From Laetmonice hystrix (Eukaryota), in contig OZ249447.1 in assembly GCA_965235115.1 (NCBI GenBank), forward strand, positions 1,860,001 to 1,924,000: a stretch of DNA of 64,000 nucleotides, written 5' to 3'. The translations under genes were made by a program, and so were the position numbers. Within the stretch, counting starts at the first letter, position 1, and the number at the start of each line of letters is the position of its first letter. Under the pieces are notes generated by a model that saw only the letters and a program-made list of their open reading frames with translations, made no database searches and was not told the origin of the DNA. Below are positions 42,430-57,429 of this stretch, one piece after another.

Positions 42430-42542
42430 TGCTATCTGGGAGACCATTCACCTCACCATCATCCATGTTGGTACTTCTATCCGATATTGCACGTTACGAT
42501 AAGAACATAAATCACTAAATTAAAAACCGAGAAATGGCTCCG

Positions 42543-43015
42543 TGTCTGGGACCGCTTGGCCAGTATCGTCCTTGAGCTCCTTGTCTGGGACCGCTTGGCC
42601 AGTATCGTCCTTGAGCTCCTTGTCTGGGACCGCTTGGCCAGTATCGTCCTTGAGCTACTTGTCTGGGACCGCTTGGCCAGTATCGTCCTTGAGCTCCTTG
42701 TCTGGGACCGTTTGACTAGTATCGTCCTTGAGCTCCGCGTGTCTGGGACCGCTTGGCCAGTATCGTCCTTGAGCTCCGCGTGTCTGGGACCGCTTGGACA
42801 GTATCGTCCTTGAGCTCCTTGTCTGGGACCGCTTGGCCAGTATCGTCCTTGAGCTCCTTGTCTGGGACCGTTTGACTAGTATCGTCCTTGAGCTCCGCGT
42901 GTCTGGGACCGTTCGACTAGTATCGTCCTTGAGCTCCGCGTGTCTGGGACTGTTCGACTAGTATCGTCCTTGAGCTCTGCGTGTCTGGAACCGCTTGGCC
43001 AGTATCGTCCTTGAG
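42543..43015. repeat. Minisatellite, 39/41-bp unit, ~12 copies
   Basis: Unit GTCTGGGACCGCTTGGCCAGTATCGTCCTTGAGCTCCTT. Confidence 0.95.
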
Positions 43016-43110
43016 CAAACGTACGTAATCAGTTGAAGGACGATTGTTCTATATGAAGTTCGACAGGAAATCGTCACATGTGGTACGATGATATTGTATC
43101 ACTGACGTCA

Positions 43111-43242
43111 TCAGTCTGATATGACGTCACTGACGTTGCGCAGAATGTTTGCGGTTGTCATGGTAGCGGGATCGTCCGTATTCGTCATAACGAGGGCGAA
43201 TTTAAAGAGTACAACGACGTAAGAGAGGATGAGGCCGAACAC
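43111..43242 (-). CDS. Gustatory receptor-like (GRL/7TM ion channel), last exon (TM7b and tail)
   Basis: TGATTGCAG| VFGLILSYVVVLFKFALVMTNTDDPATMTTANILRNVSDVISD*; phase 0; SYxxxLxKF corresponds to the TYxxxxxQF signature. It is the only good candidate I found scanning 7.4 kb by eye. Not in the ORF track. Confidence 0.75.
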   Translation of the reverse strand: MFGLILSYVVVLFKFALVMTNTDDPATMTTANILRNVSDVISD

Positions 43243-44058
43243 CTGCAATCATACAGCCAGTAAATGTCAACACAACAACTGTTCGTTAATATAAACCGAC
43301 GACAACAAACTTTGGAATATAAGGTAACGTTTTTCTTTCTTTCTTTATGTTTTTGTTGCCCCAAACGATTGAGGTGTTTGTGAGGGGACGATAGTAGGGC
43401 GCATGCGTCGTCTCCATGCTCCAACCCATGCACGGCTGGCGGATGTGAGAGGACTTCCGGCAGGCAATTCTTCTGAAGTTTATTTTGACTGATGGTCGTG
43501 CTTTGTTGTCCGCCAATAGCCTCTCTATGGAGGCGCGCTAATTACATTGAGCTGAAGGCTCAGCCAGGAGGGTGTTTAGACTGCTCGGAATGGCTAATGG
43601 GACTATCCGGAATGGTGGTCACATGTAACATGTACAAGTATAACTGCTCGAGGTGGTAAGACGCCATTGCTTTCTGTGGTGACAAATATCTCACTGCGCA
43701 ACTTACACCCGTCTAATTGGTGCTTTCCCAGCATAATTATAACAAAAACTACTACGCCATAATGTACAAACCGATAATGTAGTTACCAACAACGTAATTA
43801 CTTATCAAATGTAAAATACAAAATCTAATTACAAAGGAAATGTAAAGGATCCTCACGCTTTTTCAAAGTAACTGGGCTGATTTATTTCGTTGTAAAAGCT
43901 ACACAAAAGTTGGCTTCCCATATAATCATTGTATTTAGCTATGTGTAAAATGATGTGCCCTGTTTTATAGATTATGTTCAATCCATGCAGATGAAATGAG
44001 TCTAGGTTTATCGAATATTTATAACCCATATAATCACTCCGCGTCCTGTATGAAACCA

Positions 44059-45030
44059 CTCTGAACAAGACTTCCCCCTCAGGCTACTACCACAGCCTCA
44101 CCCTGGCTCCGACAAATAAACAGGACACATGCACTCTGAACAACACTTCCCCCTCAGGCTACTACCACAGCCTCACCCTGGCTCCGACAAATAAACAGGA
44201 CACATCCAATCTGAACAAGACTTCCCCCTCAGGATACTACCACAGCCTCACCCTGGCTCCAACAAATAAACAGGACACATGCACTCTGAACAAGACTTCC
44301 CCCTCAGGCTACTACCACAGCCTCACCCTGGCTCCGACAAATAAACAGGACACATGCACTCTGAACAAGACTTCCCCCTCAGGCTACTACCACAGCCTCA
44401 CCCTGGCTCCAACAAATAAACAGGACACATGCACTCTGAACAAGACTTCCCCCTCAGGTTACTACCACAGCCTCACCCTGGCTCCGACAAATAAACAGGA
44501 CACATCCACTCTGAACAAGACTTCCCCCTCAGGTTACTACCACAGCCTCACCCTGGCTCCGACAAATAAACAGGACACATGCACTCTGAACAAGACTTCC
44601 CCCTCAGGCTACTACCACAGCCTCACCCTGGCTTCGACAAATAAACAGGACTCATGCACTCTGAACAAGACTTCCCCCTCAGGCTACTACCACAGCCTCA
44701 CCCTCGCTCCGACAAATAAACAGGACTCATGCACTCTGAACAAGACTTCCCCCTCAGGTTACTACCACAGCCTCACCCTGGCTTCGACAAATAAACAGGA
44801 CTCATGCACTCTGAACAAGACTTCCCCCTCAGGCTACTACCACAGCCTCACCCTGGCTTCGACAAATAAACAGGACTCATGCACTCTGAACAAGACTTCC
44901 CCCTCAGGCTACTACCACAGCCTCACCCTCGCTCCGACAAATAAACAGGACTCATGCACTCTGAACAAGACTTCCCCCTCAGGCTACTACCACAGCCTCA
45001 CCCTCGCTCCGACAAATAAACAGGACACAT
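44059..45030. repeat. Minisatellite, 75-bp unit, ~13 copies (GRL intron 3)
   Basis: Unit CTCTGAACAAGACTTCCCCCTCAGGCTACTACCACAGCCTCACCCTGGCTCCGACAAATAAACAGGACACATGCA. Confidence 0.95.
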
Positions 45031-45868
45031 CCACTCGTAAAATCTGATGACTCTCACTGTCACACCCGGTTAAAGCCCTTTGAAAGGTTTCAGGGACACA
45101 AAAACAACTCAAAACGTGGGAAAAACGGAATAAATTCGGACAAAACAAAAAGGTCAGAGCTTTGGTGAAAAGTGTTTCCATCCCTAAAAGGGCGTTTTTT
45201 TGTTTTGTAAAGAGGATTCCGACTTGCCACATGGTTCCTTGACAGGCGTGACACTTCCCCTCGACTGCACCCTAACCCTCGGGGGCAACCCTAAGGCGTT
45301 TGATTGATTGCAAAATGACTTGGTTTTCATTCAGAATCGCCTTTTATTATTTAAAGTATAGATAACAGCTGTGAATCCCTCAGAGCCCTCGGGAGCTCTG
45401 GTCACCAAATCAGAGGTTTTATGGAGCCTTGCCACCACCGGTGTTACTGGTGACGTCGTGTTCCCAAGATCGCAGAAAGGCCACTTTAAGTCAGGACGGG
45501 TATCAACCCTTGGACCTTGAAGATCAAGATGAAAAGACTGACAGCCTCTTAGAGACAAAACGACGAGCAGGAGGAGAGAGCAGAACAAATAAAAGCACAA
45601 TCCCGGCTTTCGCCCCCCCCCCCGCCCCACGAGCAGAGACCAAGGTATGTTCCCATCGCCCGCACCAGGCCGTTCAGATTCAATAGGAATGTAACTCTCC
45701 GGGCAAGGAGTCGTAAAGGTGCCTTTCATTGCTCCCCGATATTTCAGTGCCTGGTGATTTATTGCCGCGCCTTGTAAACGGCTGGCGCAGGCATGTCTCA
45801 GAGGGCGACCGAATGATTGACATCTCTACAAATACTTCAAACCATTCACCAAGGACGACCATCGACCA

Positions 45869-47140
45869 CTGTCCCTCATGTCACACCGCAGGCTGCAACC
45901 CTTCTACCATACTCGTCCTTGACGCACAATCTCAGTCTGTCCCTCATGTCACACCGCAGGCTGCAACCCTTCTACCATACCCGTCCTTGACGCACAATCT
46001 CAGTCTGTCCCTCATGTCACACCGCAGGCTGCAACCCTTCTACCATACCCGTCCTTGACGCACAATCTCAGTCTGTCCCTCATGGAAGACACAACCGCAG
46101 GCTGCAACCCTTCTACCATACTCGTCCTTGACGCACAATCTCAGTCTGTCCCTCATGTAAGACACCACCGCAGGCTGCAACCCTTCTACCATACTCGTCC
46201 TTGACGCACAATCTCAGTCTGTCCCTCATGTAAGACACCACCGCAGGCTGCAACCCTTCTACCATACTCGTCCTTGACGCACAATCTCAGTCTGTCCCTC
46301 ATGTAAGACACAACCGCAGGCTGCAACCCTTCTACCATACTCGTCCTTGACGCACAATCTCAGTCTGTCCCTCATGTAAGACACAACCGCAGGCTGCAAC
46401 CCTTCTACCATACTCGTCCTTGACGCACAATCTCAGTCTGTCCCTCGATGTAAGACACAACCGCTGGCTGCAACCCTTCTGCCATACTCGTCCTTGACGC
46501 ACAATCTCAGTCTGTCCCTCATGTAAGACACAACCGCTGGCTGCAACCCTTCTGCCATACTCGTCCTTGACGCACAATCTCAGTCTGTCCCTCATGACAC
46601 ACCGCAGGCTGCAACCCTTCTACCATACCCGTCCTTGACGCACAATCTCAGTCTGTCCCTCATGTCACACCGCAGGCTGCAACCCTTCTACCATACCCGT
46701 CCTTGACGCACAATCTCAGTCTGTCCCTCATGTCACACCGCAGGCTGCAACCCTTCTACCATACTCGTCCTTGACGCACAATCTCAGTCTGTCCCTCATG
46801 TCACACCGCAGGCTGCAACCCTTCTACCATACCCGTCCTTGACGCACAATCTCAGTCTGTCCCTCATGTCACACCGCAGGCTGCAACCCTTCTACCATAC
46901 CCGTCCTTGACGCACAATCTCAGTCTGTCCCTCATGTAAGACACAACCGCAGGCTGCAACCCTTCTACCATACTCGTCCTTGACGCACAATCTCAGTCTG
47001 TCCCTCATGTAAGACACCACCGCAGCCTGCAACCCTTCTACCATACTCGTCCTTGACGCACAATCTCAGTCTGTCCCTCATGTAAGACACAACCGCAGGC
47101 TGCAACCCTTCTACCATACTCGTCCTTGACGCACAATCTC
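45869..47140. repeat. Minisatellite, 68/73-bp unit (GRL intron 3)
   Basis: CTGTCCCTCATGT(AAGA)CAC(A)ACCGCAGGCTGCAACCCTTCTACCATACTCGTCCTTGACGCACAATCTCAGT. Confidence 0.95.
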
Positions 47141-47627
47141 GGTTTATCTCGAGTTTTCTCGTCGATAATGGAAACGTCACCAGAGGGAGACGCCTGCCCC
47201 TCCAGCTGCCATGTTCAAGATGGCGTGTTGACTGACTCAAACACACGTGACGTCGGCCTCGGGTTCTGTGGCGGCGACCAGGTGCCATGTACGACGACTG
47301 CCAATGTTAGCGGGTCCAAGGGGACCCTTTAAAACTCGCGCCCACACCTGGGTGCCCACCCTAGCCCGCCTGTCTCTAATTGGGCCGGGATCAGGCCGAC
47401 TCGACATTCATTCAATCCCTCTCAGATGTTGGTCAGTCGGGGCGGGCCATTGTTTTTAATTAATTAAGTTGGCCTTTGTCGGCCTTTGAAAGTTATGGGG
47501 TTAAAGAAAGCGTGTAGGACTGTGTATATTTCGTGTGAGGGCTATAACAGTGAACGTGTATGGCTTTCGGGCTCGACCTCCGTGTGGGTATACCACCAGA
47601 TCATTCATGACGTGAACACAATAATAA

Positions 47628-47905
47628 TGATCGGATATTTACATCTGAGAACTAACGATCGTATATTTACATCTGAGAACTAACGATCGTATATTTACAT
47701 CTGAGAACTAACGATCAGACATTTACATCTGAGAACTAACGATCGTATATTTACATCTGAGAACTAACGATCAGACATTTACATCTGAGAACTAACGATC
47801 GGACATTTACATCTGAGAACTAACGATCGTATATTTACATCTGAGAACTAACGATCAGACATTTACATCTGAGAACTAACGATCGGACATTTACAGCTGA
47901 GAACT
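47628..47905. repeat. Minisatellite, 28-bp unit, ~10 copies
   Basis: Unit GATCGTATATTTACATCTGAGAACTAAC. Confidence 0.95.
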
Positions 47906-48655
47906 CCTTCGCATGCAGTCTCTACATCCCACTGGATAATTATAAACTTTAACACGTTCTGTTAGATGAGTTACTGACGCTAGAAAGAAACAAAAACTTC
48001 AGGAAAACTGGTGCTTAACGCTTGTGAATGGGAGTGGATAATAATTACACCCTCTCATAGTAATAAACATCAGCTTATATTTCATTACATAATCTGACAA
48101 TCAAGATTTGACGATTCAATTTAAATAAAAAAATCATGCCACGAAGGTTGAATGAAAAGGATACGGAAATAAATAATCTAAATGATGGACCCAGTATGAT
48201 ATCACTGATTGCGATTAGTGTAGCACAGTTTTATGACGATAGAACAAACAGTGCTATGCCACAGATGGCTGGATGGCTGCTTTATTAAAGAGACACCTTC
48301 CCCGATCGGACCGCGTACCGGCGGTTTCAGATTGTCTCCACTCGTTCAGTTTCGACCCGTGTGTGCTGTATGCAATCAGCAGACAGACTGATGCTGCTAC
48401 CAACAACATAACGCTATTCTGTCGCCATTGCTGTCTGTCTCGCTACTGTTGCCCACAATGTCCGGCAATGAAAGACGAGTATTTGAGATCCCAAACACAG
48501 AGCAAACGGAGAGTCTAAACTTCTAGTCTAATAGAGGTTTATCAAGTTTTGGTGCAGTTATATGACGGTCTATCCAGAGGTGAAAGACAGATTGAATGAA
48601 ATGTGCCCATGGACACTGAAAATTTGATCCAGACATCCAGGGCATAAAGAACAAC

Positions 48656-49545
48656 TGGACACTGGACACCGCATGGCACAACATACAGGACATGGCACTG
48701 CATGGCACAACATACAGAAAAACATGACACCGCATGGCACAACATACTGGACATGGCACTGCATTGCACAACATACAGGACATGGCACTGCATGGCACAA
48801 CATACTGGACATGGTACTGCATGGCACAACATACTGGACATGACACTGCATGGCACAACATACTGGACATGGCACTGCATTGCACAACATACTGGGCATG
48901 ACACTGCATGGCACAACATACTGGACATGACACTGCATGGCACAACATACTGGACATGGCACTGCATTGCACAACATACTGGGCATGACACTGCATGGCA
49001 CAACATACAGGACATGACACCGCATGGCACAACATACTGGACATGGCACTGCATTGCACAACATACAGGACATGACACTGCATGGCACAACATACAGGAC
49101 ATGGCACTGCATGGCACAACATACTGGGCATGACACTGCATGGCACAACATACTGGACATGACACTGCATGGCACAACATACTGGACATGGCACTGCATT
49201 GCACAACATACTGGGCATGACACTGCATGGCACAACATACAGGACATGACACCGCATGGCACAACATACTGGACATGGCACTGCATTGCACAACATACAG
49301 GACATGACACTGCATGGCACAACATACAGGACATGGCACTGCATGGCACAACATACTGGACATGACACTGCATGGCACAACATACTGGACATGACACTGC
49401 ATGGCACAACATACTGGACATGACACTGCATGGCACAACATACTGGACATGACACTGCATGGCACAACATACTGGACATGGCACTGCATGGCACAACATA
49501 CTGGACATGACACTGCATGGCACAACATACTGGACATGGCATGGC
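48656..49545. repeat. Minisatellite, 29-bp unit, ~30 copies
   Basis: Unit ACATGGCACTGCATGGCACAACATACTGG. Confidence 0.95.
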
Positions 49546-49563
49546 ATGGTACCGTTATGACCC

Positions 49564-49798: not shown

Positions 49799-50127
49799 CT
49801 ATTATCTCTGTCGTTCAGCCATTCAGTACACCCCCTCCCTCCGACGTTTCTCAGAAGGCGTTTCATTAGCAAACACCAACGAACATTTCCTCTCGACCTT
49901 TTTTAAATGCCACGAGGGGAAGACTATTTCCCGTCAGCCCTACTCAACAGATCTAGGTTTTCCCTAATTCAACCAGCTGAAAGGTCAAGGACCGTTTCTA
50001 CCCGTACTCTGCATTGAATGTGTAGCGAGATTCCATCCTCACTTCCAGTATATGTCTACTCCTAGAATGTGGGATTTAGCCTACTGCCAACATCGCCCCA
50101 TCGGAGGCCTTTGAAGTGTGAGATAAG

Positions 50128-50345
50128 GAAGTAATCACAATAAACAGAGTAAGCATATTCATACAAGTAATCACAATAAACGGAGTAACCATATTCATAC
50201 CAGGAAGTAATCACAATAAACAGAGTACCCATATTCATACAAAGAAGTAATCACAATAAACAGAGTAACCCTATTCATACAAGTAATCACAATAAACGGA
50301 GTAACCATATTCATACAAGGGAGTAATCACAATAAACAGAGTAAC
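50128..50345. repeat. ~36-40-bp tandem repeat, 5-6 copies
   Basis: AAGTAATCACAATAAACAGAGTAACCATATTCATAC core. Confidence 0.9.
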
Positions 50346-50653
50346 GCATCTTCATGAAAAAAGGAAAATCTAAGGGGGGCCCGGGCCCCCTAGGCCCCCT
50401 GGATCCCCCATTGTCGTACGCTTCCGGGTGTAGGACAGTGACGACCACATGGGAGAACCCACAGGTGGCAAACCACTTCACAAGAGATTTCAGATTTCTT
50501 CATCGATTAAACCCTAATGTTTAGTTTTTCTGTTTAAATTTACGACAGCATTAGTGTTTGTAGCGATGAGATATGCCACAATGTATTAGTATGGTATGTT
50601 GTATATTGATATCTCTTATCGTAATATATAATTTCCCCGATCCCGATACTCAC

Positions 50654-50737
50654 CATGATGAGTAACGTTCGATCTATTCGTATTAGTTTCCACACTGTCA
50701 ACCCGATATGGTCGGTGGTCACACGGTTCAGGAACAC
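50654..50737 (-). CDS. GRL exon 3 (TM7a region)
   Basis: CTTTGCAG| VFLNRVTTDHIGLTVWKLIRIDRTLLIM |GTGAGT; 84 nt, phase 0/0; the F---V------GLT-W-L--ID pattern is typical of Gr/GRL proteins just before TM7b. Confidence 0.88.
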
Positions 50738-50775: not shown

Positions 50776-50930
50776 NNNNNNNNNNNNNNNNNNNNNNNNN
50801 NNNNNNNNNNNNNNNNNNNNNNNNNNNNNNNNNNNNNNNNNNNNNNNNNNNNNNNNNNNNNNNNNNNNNNNNNNNNNNNNNNNNNNNNNNNNNNNNNNNN
50901 NNNNNNNNNNNNNNNNNNNNNNNNNNNNNN
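50776..50930. other. Assembly gap (N run) in GRL intron 2
   Basis: Run of N. Confidence 0.99.
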
Positions 50931-51780: not shown

Positions 51781-52280
51781 TTAGCTAAGCTAACAGTCCA
51801 TGTCGTCATTTTGGAGGTACTGAACTAAGAGATAACCGTGAATGGCTTCAACAACAGCCTACTGTCCACACGTTTCACACGTAAAACAACCTTCATCATG
51901 AAAATCAATCCTGTCCATAAAATCAAGAGCTATACAGAAACTTTGTATTTTTCCAAAAAAAGATTGATAGGGCATTGAAGATTCTATGAACAAATACATG
52001 GGCCTTGAGACATCTCAGGACACGAATACGTTTTCCTTGACAAGTTTTCATTGAAGAAAGGGAAACGTGACCAGCTTTCCTCGCCAACTCGTTGGAAAGC
52101 TGGTTGTGCCAGCTTTTGAGCGAGGAAACGTGACCATAGGCGACGAAAACTTGTTGGTAATCTACACGGGCACATTACTCGTCAAGGAAAGTTGTCAAGG
52201 ACAACTCGTGTTCGTGTAGAATAGGATCTTCTTCCATCAGGTTCTTTATGAGGTAAAGATTATAGACACCTGGGATCTGT

Positions 52281-54470
52281 TTGTACAACAAATACTTTAT
52301 AGTTTCGGTTTGATAGGAGAAGACGAGAGAGGTTTGTACAATAAATACTTTATAGTTTCGGTTTGATAGGAGAAGACGAGAGAGGTCTGTACAATAAATA
52401 CTTTATAGTTTCGGTTTGATAGGTGAAGACGAGAGAGGTTTGTACAATAAATACTTTATAGTTTCGGTTTGATAGGAGAAGACGAGAGAGGTTTGTACAA
52501 TAAATACTTTATAGTTTCGGTTTGATAGGAGAAGACGAGAGAGGTCTGTACAATAAATACTTTATAGTTTCGGTTTGATAGGAGAAGACGAGAGAGGTCT
52601 GTACAATAAATACTTTATAGTTTCGGTTTGATAGAAGACGAGAGAGGTCTGTACAACAAATACTTTATAGTTTCGGTTTGATAGGAGAAGACGAGAGAGG
52701 TTTGTACAATAAATACTTTATAGTTTCGGTTTGATAGGAGAAGACGAGAGAGGTTTGTACAACAAATACTTTATAGTTTCGGTTTGATAGGTGAAGACGA
52801 GAGAGGTTTGTACAACAAATACTTTGTACAACAAATACTTTATAGTTTCGGTTTGATAGGTGAAGACGAGAGAGGTTTGTACAATAAATACTTTATAGTT
52901 TCGGTTTGATAGGAGAAGACGAGAGAGGTTTGTACAATAAATACTTTATAGTTTCGGTTTGATAGGAGAAGAAGAGAGAGGTTTGTACAACAAATACTTA
53001 GTACAACAAATACTTTATAGTTTCGGTTTGATAGGTGAAGACGAGAGAGGTTTGTACAATAAATACTTTATAGTTTCGGTTTGATAGGAGAAGAAGAGAG
53101 AGGTTTGTACAACAAATACTTTGTACAACAAATACTTTATAGTTTCGGTTTGATAGGTGAAGACGAGAGAGGTTTGTACAACAAATACTTTGTACAACAA
53201 ATACTTTATAGTTTCGGTTTGATAGGTGAAGACGAGAGAGGTTTGTACAACAAATACTTTGTACAACAAATACTTTATAGTTTCGGTTTGATAGGTGAAG
53301 ACGAGAGAGGTTTGTACAATAAATACTTTATAGTTTCGGTTTGATAGGAGAAGAAGAGAGAGGTTTGTACAACAAATACTTTGTACAACAAATACTTTAT
53401 AGTTTCGGTTTGATAGGTGAAGACGAGAGAGGTTTGTACAATAAATACTTTATAGTTTCGGTTTGAAAGGAGAAGAAGAGAGAGGTTTGTACAATAAATA
53501 CTTTATAGTTTCGGTTTGATAGGAGAAGAAGAGAGAGGTTTGTACAACAAATACTTTGTACAACAAATACTTTATAGTTTCGGTTTGATAGGTGAAGACG
53601 AGAGAGGTTTGTACAACAAATACTTTGTACAACAAATACTTTATAGTTTCGGTTTGATAGGTGAAGACGAGAGAGGTCTGTACAATAAATACTTTATAGT
53701 TTCGGTTTGATAGGAGAAGACGAGAGAGGTTTGTACAATAAATACTTTATAGTTTCGGTTTGATAGGTGAAGACGAGAGAGGTGTGTACAATAAATACTT
53801 TATAGTTTCGGTTTGATAGGAGAAGACGAGAGAGGCATGTACAATAAATACTTTATAGTTTCGGTTTGATAGGTGAAGACGAGAGAGGTTTGTACAATAA
53901 ATACTTTATAGTTTCGGTTTGATAGGAGAAGACGAGAGATGTTTGTACAATAAATACTTTATAGTTTCGGTTTGATAGGAGAAGACGAGAGAGGTCTGTA
54001 CAATAAATACTTTATAGTTTCGGTTTGATAGGAGAAGACGAGAGATGTTTGTACAACAAATACTTTATAGTTTCGGTTTGATAGGTGAAGACGAGAGAGG
54101 TTTGTACAATAAATACTTTATAGTTTCGGTTTGATAGGAGAAGACGAGAGATGTTTGTACAATAAATACTTTATAGTTTCGGTTTGATAGGAGAAGACGA
54201 GAGAGGTTTGTACAATAAATACTTTATAGTTTCGGTTTGATAGGTGAAGACGAGAGAGGTTTGTACAATAAATACTTTATAGTTTCGGTTTGATAGGAGA
54301 AGACGAGAGATGTTTGTACAATAAATACTTTATAGTTTCGGTTTGATAGGAGAAGACGAGAGAGGTTTGTACAATAAATACTTTATAGTTTCGGTTTGAT
54401 AGGAGAAGACGAGAGAGGTTTGTACAATAGTTTATAGTTTGGGTTTGAAAGGAGAAGACGAGAGAGGCAT
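52281..54470. repeat. Minisatellite, 53-bp unit with 69-bp variant (GRL intron 2)
   Basis: Unit AAATACTTTATAGTTTCGGTTTGATAGGAGAAGACGAGAGAGGTTTGTACAAT; a 16-bp internal duplication in a central block of units. Confidence 0.97.
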
Positions 54471-54580: not shown

Positions 54581-54655
54581 CTGAACAGATATACCCTCCT
54601 GGGTAGTACAGGAACGTAGGTCAACATCGTGGATGATAGTTTTGGGGACTTTAGC
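54581..54655 (-). CDS. GRL exon 2
   Basis: TTTCTTTCAG| AKVPKTIIHDVDLRSCTTQEGISVQ |GTACGT; 75 nt, phase 0/0. Not in the ORF track. Confidence 0.82.
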
Positions 54656-54851
54656 CTGAAAGAAATCGGCGACGACTGTAAATGATTGCGTGCAGTCAGG
54701 TCCTCAAATATTGTTCTGGAATAATTTTCTTTTAAACATGAAAACAAAATCTGATACGTTCTCTATCATTCTGCCATGAAGTAAACTAAAACATATTTGA
54801 ATGTTTTAGCTGTTCGTTGTTACTGAGAATATGATTAATATCGATACCTAC

Positions 54852-56027
54852 CGCTGCGCACAGCGACGCTCCCGCCACAGTAATGCAGACGACATGCATG
54901 ATGGCGATAATAAAGAACACTACACTGGCAGCTAACGCCATGGCGTCTTGGGCAAAGAGTTCTTCATTTTTGATAAGTACAAATATAAAGGCACATATTG
55001 TCGGAATATCAAACAGGTAGGTCAATAAGTTAAATAGCGACAACATGTCGTCGAGAGTATCAGTCACTTTACACAACAGCAAATGTCGCTGTCTGTTACC
55101 CTCAATGTCAGATCCAGTTCCGAGGTGAGGGCGCCCCCTGGTGTCAGGGGTAACTATTGACGACCGGAAGCCGGACGAAAACTCCTGATACTCCATTTTC
55201 AGCAAAACGCAGATGATAACGAGCACGATGTTCGGCTGTATCCAACAGAATGCGATGTAATAATGAAATACGAAGTAGATAGCCGCCACATAGATGGGAA
55301 CAGGGCCTTCTAGATTAAAGGGCATCAGAAACATTCGAGTAAACTCCGGTAACTTGATGCTAAATAGAACTATCCCGACTACAGCGAACGAGAGAATCAT
55401 GACGTTAACTGACATTGCTACTCGACATGCGAATCCTTTCAGCTTCTCCGTCGGTACTCCCCTGTATCTATTTTTATATGACTGCCACAGGCGCATGAAC
55501 CGACCGATGTGTCTGTAGTTACTGATGATAAAGACGGTGACACTGAGAGCACACTGAAGGTTCCAGATGTGGATGACTATCTTCATGAAGAGCCGGGTAC
55601 CATGAGAGTCAGGCTCCACGTAGGCGGCAAAGTATCTGAGAGCGTTGAACCAGAGGAGGCAGAGAACCATGACACAGTAAAATGTACAGAATTGAAACCA
55701 GCGCCCCTCACGGTCGCGGAGAACGAGTCCGTAACATTTGAGGCTGATGAAGAGTGGTCTCATGACCTTACCGATACTAGCCGTGCTGTCCTCTCCTGGA
55801 GCTTCTCGTACTCCTGGAGGAACCATGGAGTGACAACTGCGATCAGAGCTTCGCTCAGACGTATCCGAAGTTCCTCTGCTCTGAGAGAGAAGTGGTGTAC
55901 CTTGTTGGGGGAGGTGTGTTGCCGCTGGTAACGGGGTCGGGATGGTAGGGATCCGGTGCACGACTTTGCCATTCACGTTTACGTATGTGTGCCCGTGCCT
56001 CGTAGTCATTTTTTGCCCGTCCGGCAT
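54852..56027 (-). CDS. Gustatory receptor-like (7tm_7 / 7TM ion channel) exon 1 (N-terminus, TM1-TM6; 392 codons)
   Basis: Six hydrophobic helices; LKCYGL before TM1; WIQP in TM4; IEGNRQRHLLLCKVTDTLDDMLS matches the Gr 'R--H--LC--V--LD--FS' motif; donor GCG|GTAGGT, phase 0. Confidence 0.9.
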
Positions 56028-57429
56028 TTGTGGGAAGTTTCATCTGACTGGGGTTTTTACCCAATCAGGAGGCAGGTAACAAAACATGGGCGGGCCTCTC
56101 CAAGTGAAGGCCTTGGCGTGTGGGTGTGTGTTTGTGTGTGTGAAACGGTATGTGAACACGTTTCTCATTGGTTCCTCGCCAGGACAGCACAATTAAAGGA
56201 CTTCCGGTCAAGAAACGTATGCGTGAAAGGCAAAAAGCCTAGAGCCGCACCCTACTCTCAGCGTGTCTCCTTACTGGAAATCTTGCTCCCAATGAAGATC
56301 CTGAAAGCAAGCAAAGGAATCACACGTTAAGAAAGGTTTAGGACATAAAGGTCAGATGGCAATTTTGCAAAATTGCAAGCAAACCTTATAAAATATGAAC
56401 GCCCGTGCTGATTACAGTTTTTAACGGATTGGGGCGATTCATTTTAACAGTAAATAAAACTTCTGCTTCGTCAGCATGTTTCTCTCCCGACCGTTCCCAT
56501 AGCTGCAGACAGCGCTGACAACTAATAGGTAGTACTGTTATAATTGTTCAGCAATCCAGCGAAGTGGTCTTGTAAATCGAGTCGCAGTCAAAGTAAGCAT
56601 GAAAGAGAGTAACAATACAAGCAGCAGAGAATACTTTGGGGAGAGTAGAAAGTAAGCTAAGTGGATAAAACGGGGCATTACAACATCCAAGGAATTAACA
56701 GAAGTAGAAATTTGACATTTGATCAGCATTCGATATACTGTAGTACATTTCTTTATACAGTGCTGTCACTGCATCAAGAGAATCACCGCGATGTCGAATA
56801 AAGCGCGACCATTTTGTTTGAGAGTTATTAAATATTAAAATATTGCGATTCGACTGATAGTCCGTAAGACTGATACTTGAAACTGTCATAACATAGAGTT
56901 TCTAGGGTAACGGAGTAAGTGGTGTTGCTAGGTTACCGTCTAATCACTGTGGCACAAAGTCAGAAATCATCAAGTCGGTACAGCACTGTCAAGATGGATC
57001 GGTTTCGACCTCATTGATATTATTAGGTCATCATTTACTGAAATATCGAGTTAATCCTGGTTGTATTATAAGATAGAAGATGTGAGAGACACTAGTCGCG
57101 CATACATTGGACCAGATCACCAGCGCGTCTGTGCTGATATACATCCGCGCCCAGATTGATCTCGCGAGATTGATGACGAGATGAGAACGCGAGGAAATGG
57201 ATGCCGGGGTGTAGTGACAGTTCAGATAGTCAGTGATCTTCACTGCTTCCATGCACATTGTCGCTATGGACTGGCTGATCGAGGCTTTCTCTAGATAAAG
57301 ATACACTGATGACTGTCTGCACATTGGATCATTGGATCAACTCCTGCCAACCTCCCGGCTAGAGTTCATGTCATTGAGTGCCGCTAGAGGGCGGCCATCA
57401 CACAGCACAGTCAACGCGTCCAACCGGAC

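What the first reader, a model, noticed from the sequence alone, without database searches (positions are those of the whole stretch)
43198..43224. Pore-lining signature TYxxxxxQF replaced by SYVVVLFKF (Gln to Lys at the gate position)
Seen: the last exon encodes SYVVVLFKF. Established: in insect Or/Gr structures the TM7b helix lines the pore, and the conserved Gln next to a hydrophobic gate residue turns toward the lumen on opening of these cation channels. Inference: four lysines at this ring could change selectivity (reduced cation or even anion permeation) or gating, which would be a new behaviour for the family. This depends on the exon assignment and alignment register.
Basis: partly seen in the sequence, partly recalled or inferred. 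Interest (0 to 1): 0.7.

Follow-up and report, generated by a model that had tools for sequence, protein, structure and literature searches.

The report
Lysine-type pore motif in a GRL channel gene
The stretch is the real, conserved last exon of an intact gustatory-receptor-like ion-channel gene whose pore helix carries Lys where insect receptors carry the gating Gln; this Lys (or Arg) marks an old subfamily in worms and is already allowed by the published family motif, so the gene is ordinary but its ion selectivity is an open, testable question.

Summary
Observation confirmed. Window 43224..43198 (minus strand) encodes SYVVVLFKF, and the motif occurs only once in the six-frame translation of the window.

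- **Exon assignment and register hold.** An orthologue 73% identical in exon 1 has the same exons and the identical 9-mer (12 synonymous vs 1 non-synonymous change in 20 codons). An intron-less 504-aa homologue (P0011) aligns without gaps across all three junctions. A family profile places the Lys in the column of the gate-adjacent Gln of solved Gr64a and Gr43a.
- **The Lys is not private.** All seven genes of this subfamily in the genome carry K or R there, and about a dozen more distant paralogues carry Q. K also occurs in Capitella, Owenia and Macrostomum homologues.
- **It is not new to the family.** The published animal-GRL motif is (T/S)Yhhhhh(Q/K/E)(F/L/M) (Robertson 2015, as quoted in PMC7746228).
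- **The functional inference is untested.** Altered or anion selectivity has not been measured. MhOR5 Q467R is strongly impaired, so a basic residue is probably not neutral.
- **No RNA data were found.**

Verdict: new member of a known kind; modest interest.

The parts
54852..56027 (-). Exon 1 (392 codons from the first ATG): N-terminus and helices S1-S6 of the GRL. It ends at a phase-0 GTAGGT donor.
   Evidence: 417-aa open frame. Pfam 7tm_7 E=1.9e-10, 41 bits against a cut-off of 26.6, profile positions 2-292 of 370. Donor read. Eleven paralogues examined in the same genome all end exon 1 at the same position with a GT donor.
54581..54655 (-). Exon 2 (25 codons), phase 0 at both ends (tttcag acceptor, GTACGT donor).
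   Evidence: One of the few DNA matches outside exon 1 to the orthologous locus L013 (80% over 75 nt). Sequence and splice sites. 13 synonymous vs 2 non-synonymous codon differences from the orthologue.
50654..50737 (-). Exon 3 (28 codons): end of S7a and start of S7b (..HIGLTVWKLIRIDRTLLIM), phase 0 at both ends. A masked N run (50776-50930) lies 38 nt upstream in the intron; it was left untouched.
   Evidence: DNA match to L013 (75.5% over 98 nt). Splice sites. 16 synonymous vs 3 non-synonymous codon differences. Exon-3 homologues were found for all six subfamily paralogues.
43111..43242 (-). Exon 4 (43 codons plus TGA): the rest of pore helix S7b and the extracellular C-terminal tail.
   Evidence: Phase-0 acceptor ttgcag. 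The orthologous exon at L017:15241 follows a tttcag acceptor; the first 20 codons show 12 synonymous and 1 non-synonymous difference. Gap-free alignment with the intron-less homologue P0011 across the junction.
43198..43224 (-). TM7b signature SYVVVLFKF = residues 452-460 of the 488-aa model. S452 is the hydroxyl-ring position, Y453 the lipid-contact Tyr, V456 the inner hydrophobic gate position, K459 the column of the gating Gln, and F460 the outer plug position.
   Evidence: Residue roles are taken from BmGr9 (T436, Y437, I440, Q443, F444) in PMC11100771 and assigned here by alignment, not measured.
43201..43203 (-). Lys459 codon (AAA).
   Evidence: AAA in the orthologue too, AAG in P0011. 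No variant in the sample's contigs.

Best explanation
Shown: the stretch is part of the terminal coding exon of an intact, selectively constrained gustatory-receptor-like (GRL, 7TMIC superfamily, Pfam 7tm_7) gene. [quoted passage not shown] Its S7b pore helix carries (S)Y-hhhhh-(K)F. Lys459 falls in the alignment column of the Gln that, in solved insect receptors, faces lipid in the closed channel and swings into the outer pore when the neighbouring hydrophobic plug swings out. The basic residue is a trait of a whole subfamily. All 7 members in this genome have K or R, and so do homologues in the annelids Capitella and Owenia and the flatworm Macrostomum. The more distant paralogues keep Q. 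The variant falls inside the published GRL motif (T/S)Yhhhhh(Q/K/E)(F/L/M).

Inferred, with my odds:
- The protein assembles into tetramers through its S5-S7a anchor domain, like ORs and GRs (about 0.7; homomer or heteromer is open).
- In the closed state F460 plugs the mouth and the Lys side chain snorkels toward the outer-leaflet head groups.
- On opening, the S7b twist brings the basic side chains to the outer mouth. There they change gating or permeation relative to Q-type paralogues, most likely lowering cation and especially divalent flux (about 0.55 that there is a measurable difference).
- A full switch to anion permeation is possible but less likely (about 0.15).
For: Gene and family:
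- Pfam 7tm_7 above its curated threshold.
- All four splice sites canonical and phase 0.
- The model aligns colinearly and without gaps to the intron-less 504-aa homologue P0011, which carries the identical 9-mer.
- The orthologue at 73% exon-1 identity has the same exons and motif, with 41 synonymous vs 6 non-synonymous codon differences over exon 2, exon 3 and the first 20 codons of exon 4.

Register:
- K aligns with Q in a 12-protein alignment.
- The profile aligns '..tYfvvlvqf' onto VTYELVLLQF of Gr64a and ATYLVILIQF of Gr43a.

Fold:
- The AF2 model of P0011 has pLDDT 81 and pTM 0.78; the S7b helix spans 454-484 and contains K473.
- The top 24 Foldseek PDB hits are all insect GR/OR/Orco chains, TMt 0.63-0.71, and nothing else scores below E=0.1.

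Subfamily trait:
- Own-genome genes read SYVFVLIKF, SYLFVLIKF, TYIVILLKF, SYMVVLMKF, SNFFVLLRF and SNVFVLLRF, against TYF..LLQF/QL in the C8, C19 and C21 arrays.
- The seven genes score 416-493 bits to the subfamily profile; the next gene scores 64 bits.
- Named K-type homologues occur in Capitella, Owenia and Macrostomum.
- An AU test does not reject a single K/R clade (p=0.13).

Tetramer: four copies of P0011:255-504 give ipSAE 0.66 against a best control of 0.00. Runs agree in at least 89% of contacts and partner pLDDT is at least 69. The mark was reached by 21 of 30 solved homo-pairs and 0 of 23 single chains. The interface (319-333, 411-440, 446-458) corresponds to the anchor domain.

Residue roles: BmGr9 Q443/F444 switch (PMC11100771). 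MhOR5 Q467A and Q467R are strongly impaired, while Q467N is enhanced. Orco Q472 faces lipid in the closed state (bioRxiv 10.1101/2021.01.24.427933).

Known motif: PMC7746228.
Against: - No expression data: no RNA run holds exon 1.
- The structure and tetramer predictions were made on the 31%-identical proxy P0011, not on the window's own spliced protein. The tetramer pass may be recalled from solved OR/GR complexes, and the calibration used two copies rather than four.
- No coordinates were available, so the side-chain direction of the Lys was not measured.
- The family motif tolerates Q, K and E, so the position may only need a long polar side chain, and the Lys may be nearly neutral.
- The inner hydroxyl ring (S452) typical of the cation pathway is kept, which argues against a wholesale change of pore chemistry.
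- The tree backbone is weak. The ML tree needs 4 state changes, and the clade tested by AU was defined after the tree had been seen.
Confidence: 0.8

Rival explanations
1. K/R-type GRLs are specialised partner subunits that work only in heteromers with Q-type GRLs, in the way insect tuning ORs (with a degenerate motif) work with Orco. One or two basic residues then tune a pore whose Gln ring is supplied by the partner.
For: The genome encodes both types: 7 K/R genes and at least 12 Q genes. The motif is much less conserved in heteromeric tuning ORs (PMC11100771). Non-functional Orco Q472A is partly rescued by co-expressing an OR.
Against: Apart from K/R, the motif (S/T, Y, hydrophobic core, F/L) is well kept, and it is invariant between orthologues, unlike in tuning ORs. 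The homotetramer prediction passes its controls (weak evidence). No co-expression data exist.
Confidence: 0.25
2. The Lys is a near-neutral polar substitute for Gln. The channel is an ordinary non-selective cation channel, and the K/R pattern only reflects shared ancestry.
For: The published GRL motif allows Q, K or E at this position. Outside insects the motif is only partly conserved. Two Owenia members of the same group have T or I there. The open MhOR5 pore is about 9 A wide at this ring.
Against: MhOR5 Q467R is strongly impaired. K/R is kept in all 7 own-genome members and across annelid and flatworm homologues, and the 9-mer is invariant between orthologues despite 12 synonymous changes in 20 codons.
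Confidence: 0.3
3. The exon is not part of a working gene: a chance open frame, a pseudogene remnant or an assembly artefact.
For: No RNA evidence. The 7.4-kb and 3.8-kb introns are packed with tandem repeats, and a masked gap sits next to exon 3.
Against: The frame is intact and the splice sites are canonical. The orthologue has the same four exons with synonymous changes far outnumbering non-synonymous ones. The model is colinear with the intron-less homologue P0011. The motif is unique in the window. Contigs agree.
Confidence: 0.03

Closest known systems
Animal gustatory-receptor-like proteins (GRLs) as defined by Robertson 2015, with TM7 motif (T/S)Yhhhhh(Q/K/E)(F/L/M); e.g. Capitella teleta R7UUM2 (TYSVILLKF)
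   Same: Pfam 7tm_7; long first exon followed by three phase-0 introns; motif fits exactly with S, Y, K and F; the K variant is shared with the Capitella, Owenia and Macrostomum proteins.
   Different: Nothing categorical. This gene is a new, unannotated member with very long repeat-filled introns. Its closest named relatives are only about 20-30% identical.
Bombyx mori Gr9 / Drosophila Gr43a and Gr64a (solved fructose/sugar-gated tetrameric cation channels)
   Same: Same fold (Foldseek TMt 0.64-0.69 for the proxy model). Same S7b signature register. The hydroxyl position, Tyr, inner hydrophobic gate position and terminal Phe are all present.
   Different: Lys instead of the gate-switch Gln (Q443 in BmGr9). 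The hydrophobic helix continues about 4-5 residues beyond KF (ALVM), whereas in Q-type proteins the hydrophobic stretch ends at the motif. The ligand is unknown. Sequence identity is 11-16%.
Machilis hrabei OR5 (homotetrameric odorant-gated channel) and its Q467R mutant
   Same: Same column. In MhOR5 the Gln rotates into the open pore, and an engineered Arg there strongly impairs Ca2+-reported activity. This makes the mutant the nearest experimental analogue of a basic residue at this site.
   Different: In MhOR5 the basic residue is an artificial mutation in a Q-adapted background. Here it is natural, old and conserved, so the rest of the protein has presumably adapted to it.
Insect tuning ORs with Orco
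   Same: They are precedents for subunits that lack the canonical Gln yet work, because a partner supplies it.
   Different: Tuning ORs have a generally degenerate motif. Here only the Gln position differs, and it is fixed as K/R.

Membership tests
GR/GRL family (7TMIC superfamily, Pfam PF08395 7tm_7) | Significant match to the 7tm_7 profile above the curated threshold | tested here: met
   Exon 1 alone: E=1.9e-10, 41 bits against a cut-off of 26.6, profile positions 2-292 of 370. The full-length homologue P0011 covers profile positions 3-366.
GR/GRL family (7TMIC superfamily, Pfam PF08395 7tm_7) | TM7 signature (T/S)Yhhhhh(Q/K/E)(F/L/M) near the C-terminus | tested here: met
   SYVVVLFKF at residues 452-460. 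Motif definition taken from PMC7746228, which quotes Robertson 2015.
GR/GRL family (7TMIC superfamily, Pfam PF08395 7tm_7) | Conserved C-terminal phase-0 introns, the last one just before the exon that encodes the TM7 motif | tested here: met
   Three phase-0 introns after codons 392, 417 and 445. The first position is shared by all 11 paralogues examined. The feature is described in bioRxiv 10.1101/2022.12.13.519744.
GR/GRL family (7TMIC superfamily, Pfam PF08395 7tm_7) | Seven-helix fold with long S4-S6 and a split S7a/S7b, similar to solved OR/GR structures | tested here: met
   Tested on the proxy P0011 (31% identical, colinear); the window's own spliced protein could not be submitted. pLDDT 81, pTM 0.78, helices 263-311, 315-363, 377-416, 424-437 and 454-484. 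The top 24 PDB hits are all GR/OR/Orco.
GR/GRL family (7TMIC superfamily, Pfam PF08395 7tm_7) | Tetramer held by the cytoplasmic anchor domain, with S7b lining a central pore | tested here: inconclusive
   Prediction only. ipSAE 0.66 against a best control of 0.00; runs agree in at least 89% of contacts; partner pLDDT at least 69; interface at 319-333, 411-440 and 446-458. The pass may be recalled from solved relatives, and it was made on the proxy, cut to residues 255-504.
GR/GRL family (7TMIC superfamily, Pfam PF08395 7tm_7) | Ligand-gated cation conductance | not testable with these tools
   Needs electrophysiology. No ligand is known.
Canonical insect-type GR pore (TYhhhhhQF with the Gln/Phe gate switch) | Gln at the penultimate motif position | tested here: not met
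   Lys459 occupies that column. All seven subfamily members in this genome have K or R.

The most novel reading that the evidence does not exclude
The K/R-type GRLs, an old spiralian subfamily to which this gene belongs, form channels whose outer-mouth ring of basic side chains reverses or strongly shifts charge selectivity (anion-permeable, or monovalent-only with Ca2+ excluded). That would be the first non-cation-selective members of the OR/GR/GRL superfamily. The same genome offers natural K-, R- and Q-type paralogues for comparison.
Probability: 0.13. Interest if true: 0.8.

Novelty: new member of a known kind. Interest (0 to 1): 0.33.

Why it matters
No function is known for almost any non-insect GRL, and the determinants of ion selectivity in the OR/GR/GRL channel superfamily are poorly mapped. 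This locus shows that a basic residue at the gate-switch position is kept under strong purifying selection in a defined subfamily alongside Q-type paralogues in the same genome. That provides a clean natural experiment: K- or R-type against Q-type, plus reciprocal point mutants. It can test whether this position sets charge selectivity or gating. As a sequence observation, however, the Lys is already covered by the published family motif, so the finding is not a surprise to specialists.

Tried and rejected
- Single-sequence phmmer of P0011 against PDB chains gave only spurious hits. A 12-sequence profile was needed.
- A word-based homologue search limited to the C-terminal 100 residues of P0011 found only P0011 itself.
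- No paper in the held library uses K/R forms of the motif string or links 7TMICs with anion conduction. Robertson 2015 is not held, so what it says about K-type GRLs was read only through PMC7746228.
- No RNA run holds exon 1, so expression and splicing could not be checked with reads. The single read-laying run was used on DNA contigs of the same sample instead.
- Contigs for the closest orthologue P0001 (89% identical) and for P0004 and P0005 could not be fetched because the files were too large. The contigs for P0003, P0009, P0013 and P0015 were too short to reach the last exon.
- blastn between the window and the orthologous locus found only the exons, so the introns are unalignable.
- The window's own spliced protein was not sent to the structure or complex tools, because they accept only unaltered translations. 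P0011 served as proxy.
- Pseudogene or chance-ORF reading: rejected (see rivals).
- The idea that Trp in IGLTxW contacts the Lys was dropped. That residue lies about 20 residues upstream, at the S7a/S7b junction on the cytoplasmic side.

Full report
**1. The observation**

The reverse complement of window 43198-43224 reads SYVVVLFKF. The plus strand gives an unrelated peptide. The 9-mer lies in a short open frame that begins right after a ttgcag acceptor and ends at TGA 43113..43111. A scan of all six frames of the window for [ST]Y + five hydrophobic residues + [QKR][FL] returns this site only. Contigs from three runs of one sample cover the codon without difference; the only variant is at 43067. 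These contigs are probably the assembly's own source, so they exclude an assembly slip but give no independent support.

**2. The gene**

Upstream on the minus strand a 417-aa open frame (56039..54789) matches Pfam 7tm_7 above its curated cut-off. The match is E=1.9e-10, 41 bits, covering profile positions 2-292 of 370, so about 80 C-terminal profile positions were missing. The frame is interrupted by a GTAGGT donor after codon 392.

Two short conserved blocks between exon 1 and the last exon came from a blastn against the orthologous locus of another species (L013/L017, 73% identical in exon 1). Apart from the tail of exon 1, they are the only intronic-region matches. Both are bounded by AG and GT in phase 0 in both species.

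The model has four exons:

| Exon | Window coordinates (minus strand) |
|---|---|
| 1 | 56027..54852 |
| 2 | 54655..54581 |
| 3 | 50737..50654 |
| 4 | 43242..43111 |

The product is 488 aa, and Lys459 is the residue in question.

Three lines support the exon assignment:
- The orthologue has the same last exon behind a tttcag acceptor, with the identical 9-mer.
- Codon comparison gives 12 synonymous vs 1 non-synonymous difference in the first 20 codons of exon 4, 16 vs 3 in exon 3 and 13 vs 2 in exon 2. This is strong purifying selection.
- A 504-aa homologue from a 2,080-nt intron-less JGI contig (P0011, 31% identical) aligns without a gap across all three junctions. It carries the same SYVVVLFKF, encoded with AAG rather than AAA.

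**3. The register**

In an alignment of 12 full-length GRLs the K of P0011, Capitella P0062 and Macrostomum P0079 stands in the column of Q in the canonical TYxxxxxQF proteins. A profile of that alignment hits solved Gr64a, Gr43a, BmGr9, Orco, OR28 and MhOR5 chains (E from 1e-10 to 1e-4). It aligns its motif onto VTYELVLLQF of Gr64a and ATYLVILIQF of Gr43a.

An AF2 model of P0011 (pLDDT 81, pTM 0.78) shows the long S4-S6 helices, a short S7a (424-437) and an S7b helix (454-484) that contains K473. Its 24 best PDB matches are all insect GR/OR/Orco chains, with TMt 0.63-0.71.

Four copies of P0011:255-504 are predicted to assemble:
- ipSAE is 0.66 against a best control of 0.00.
- Runs agree in at least 89% of contacts, and partner pLDDT is at least 69.
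- The mark was reached by 21 of 30 solved homo-pairs and 0 of 23 single chains.
- The interface (319-333, 411-440, 446-458) is the anchor-domain region.

This pass may be recalled from solved relatives. It was made on a proxy, so it only shows likeness.

**4. Is the Lys private?**

No. The genome (627 Mb, 35 contigs) holds at least 26 GRL exon-1 matches. Seven score 416-493 bits to the subfamily profile, and the next scores 64 bits.

The last exons of those seven read:

| Gene | Motif |
|---|---|
| this gene | SYVVVLFKF |
| L002 | SYVFVLIKF |
| L003 | SYLFVLIKF |
| L004 | TYIVILLKF |
| L005 | SYMVVLMKF |
| L006 | SNFFVLLRF |
| L007 | SNVFVLLRF |

About a dozen more distant paralogues in tandem arrays on C8, C19 and C21 read TYF..LLQF or ..QL.

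Among 150 HMMER representatives, the full-length proteins nearest the subfamily carry K:
- Capitella teleta R7UUM2, TYSVILLKF
- Owenia fusiformis, AYIIILLKL and GYMIVLWKL
- Macrostomum lignano, SYTLLFVKL

Two Owenia paralogues in that group have T or I at the position. The Q-type hits come from bivalves, Lottia, Ptychodera, Owenia and Capitella.

A tree built on the exon-1 region only has a weak backbone and needs four state changes. An AU test does not reject a single K/R (plus T/I) clade (p=0.13). The group was defined after the tree had been seen, so this shows compatibility, not proof. From the nearest named relatives the host is probably an annelid; this is an inference.

**5. What is known**

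- **BmGr9.** F444 plugs the closed pore. On fructose binding, Q443 swings in to make the mouth hydrophilic. T436 forms a hydroxyl ring and Y437 holds a pore-penetrating lipid (PMC11100771).
- **MhOR5.** Gln467 rotates into a 9.2-A open pore. Q467A and Q467R strongly impair function, while Q467N enhances it.
- **Orco.** Q472 faces the lipid in the closed state. Q472A homomers are dead but are partly rescued by an OR partner (bioRxiv 10.1101/2021.01.24.427933).

However, the family motif for animal GRLs is published as (T/S)Yhhhhh(Q/K/E)(F/L/M) (Robertson 2015, quoted in PMC7746228). Outside insects the motif is known to be only partly conserved. SYVVVLFKF is therefore a textbook GRL motif, not a departure from it. 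I found no paper in the held library that tests the permeation of a K-type GRL or links the superfamily to anion conduction. Robertson 2015 itself is not held.

**6. Mechanism (inference)**

The subunit most likely forms tetramers. In the closed state F460 would plug the mouth while Lys459 points outward and snorkels to the head groups, as Gln472 of Orco points into lipid. The opening twist would bring the basic side chains to the outer mouth.

Given the MhOR5 Q467R result, a measurable effect on gating or cation (especially divalent) flux is more likely than not. A true anion channel is possible but unproven. It is made less likely by the retained inner hydroxyl ring (S452) and by the family's tolerance of Q, K and E.

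Two descriptive co-variations with K/R were seen:
- The five residues after the motif are more hydrophobic (mean Kyte-Doolittle hydropathy (KD) +0.4 vs -1.0), and the model helix extends 11 residues past the Lys.
- A Trp in IGLTxW of exon 3 is nearly universal in K/R genes and rare in Q genes.

Neither is corrected for phylogeny.

**7. Verdict**

It is a new member of a known kind, carrying a known motif variant. The functional idea remains an open hypothesis that ordinary experiments can test.

Noticed in passing
window 42537-43016, 44057-45036, 45882-47140, 47625-47905, 48650-49549, 50126-50355, 52279-54467: The introns and 3' flank of the GRL gene are packed with long tandem arrays (periods 39/160, 75, 73, 28/84, 29, 40, 53/159 nt; up to 2.2 kb). 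The 39-nt array starts about 95 nt beyond the stop codon. The orthologous locus shares none of this at the DNA level.
   Followed up: partly
window 43103-43110 and 43122-43129: Two perfect CRE-like palindromes TGACGTCA lie 19 nt apart and flank the stop codon of the GRL gene. The window holds 5 copies in all, against 1.5 expected by chance.
   Followed up: no
L006:3849-3899 and L007:3512-3562 (G000 C5, tandem pair about 5 kb apart): Two subfamily paralogues read SNFFVLLRF and SNVFVLLRF. They have Arg instead of Lys, and Asn instead of the otherwise near-invariant motif Tyr that contacts the pore-penetrating lipid in BmGr9.
   Followed up: no
exon 3, window 50654-50737, and homologous exons (L004:3356, L018:2590, L020:786, L003:2780, L019:871): Trp in the IGLTxW segment (S7a/S7b junction) accompanies K/R in nearly all subfamily members. 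Q-type GRLs mostly have F, L, Y, I or M there. The reason is unexplained.
   Followed up: partly
P0028 and P0042 (Owenia fusiformis): Inside the well-supported group that holds K-type Owenia and Macrostomum proteins, two Owenia paralogues have Thr or Ile at the Gln/Lys position, so the basic residue can be lost secondarily.
   Followed up: partly
window 50776-50930: A masked N run lies 38 nt upstream of the exon 3 acceptor, inside intron 2. It was left unfilled, and no reads were laid over it.
   Followed up: no
window 43067: G>A difference in the contigs of two of the four runs of the same sample, in the 3' flank of the gene. It is probably a heterozygous site.
   Followed up: no
G000 C8:21.23-21.26 Mb, C19:4.60-4.61 and 6.49 Mb, C21:10.44 Mb, C7:32.48-32.50 Mb, C18:3.47 Mb: Q-type and more divergent GRL genes sit in tandem arrays with about 4-5 kb spacing and short introns. 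This contrasts with the 12.9-kb, repeat-filled K-type gene in the window.
   Followed up: partly
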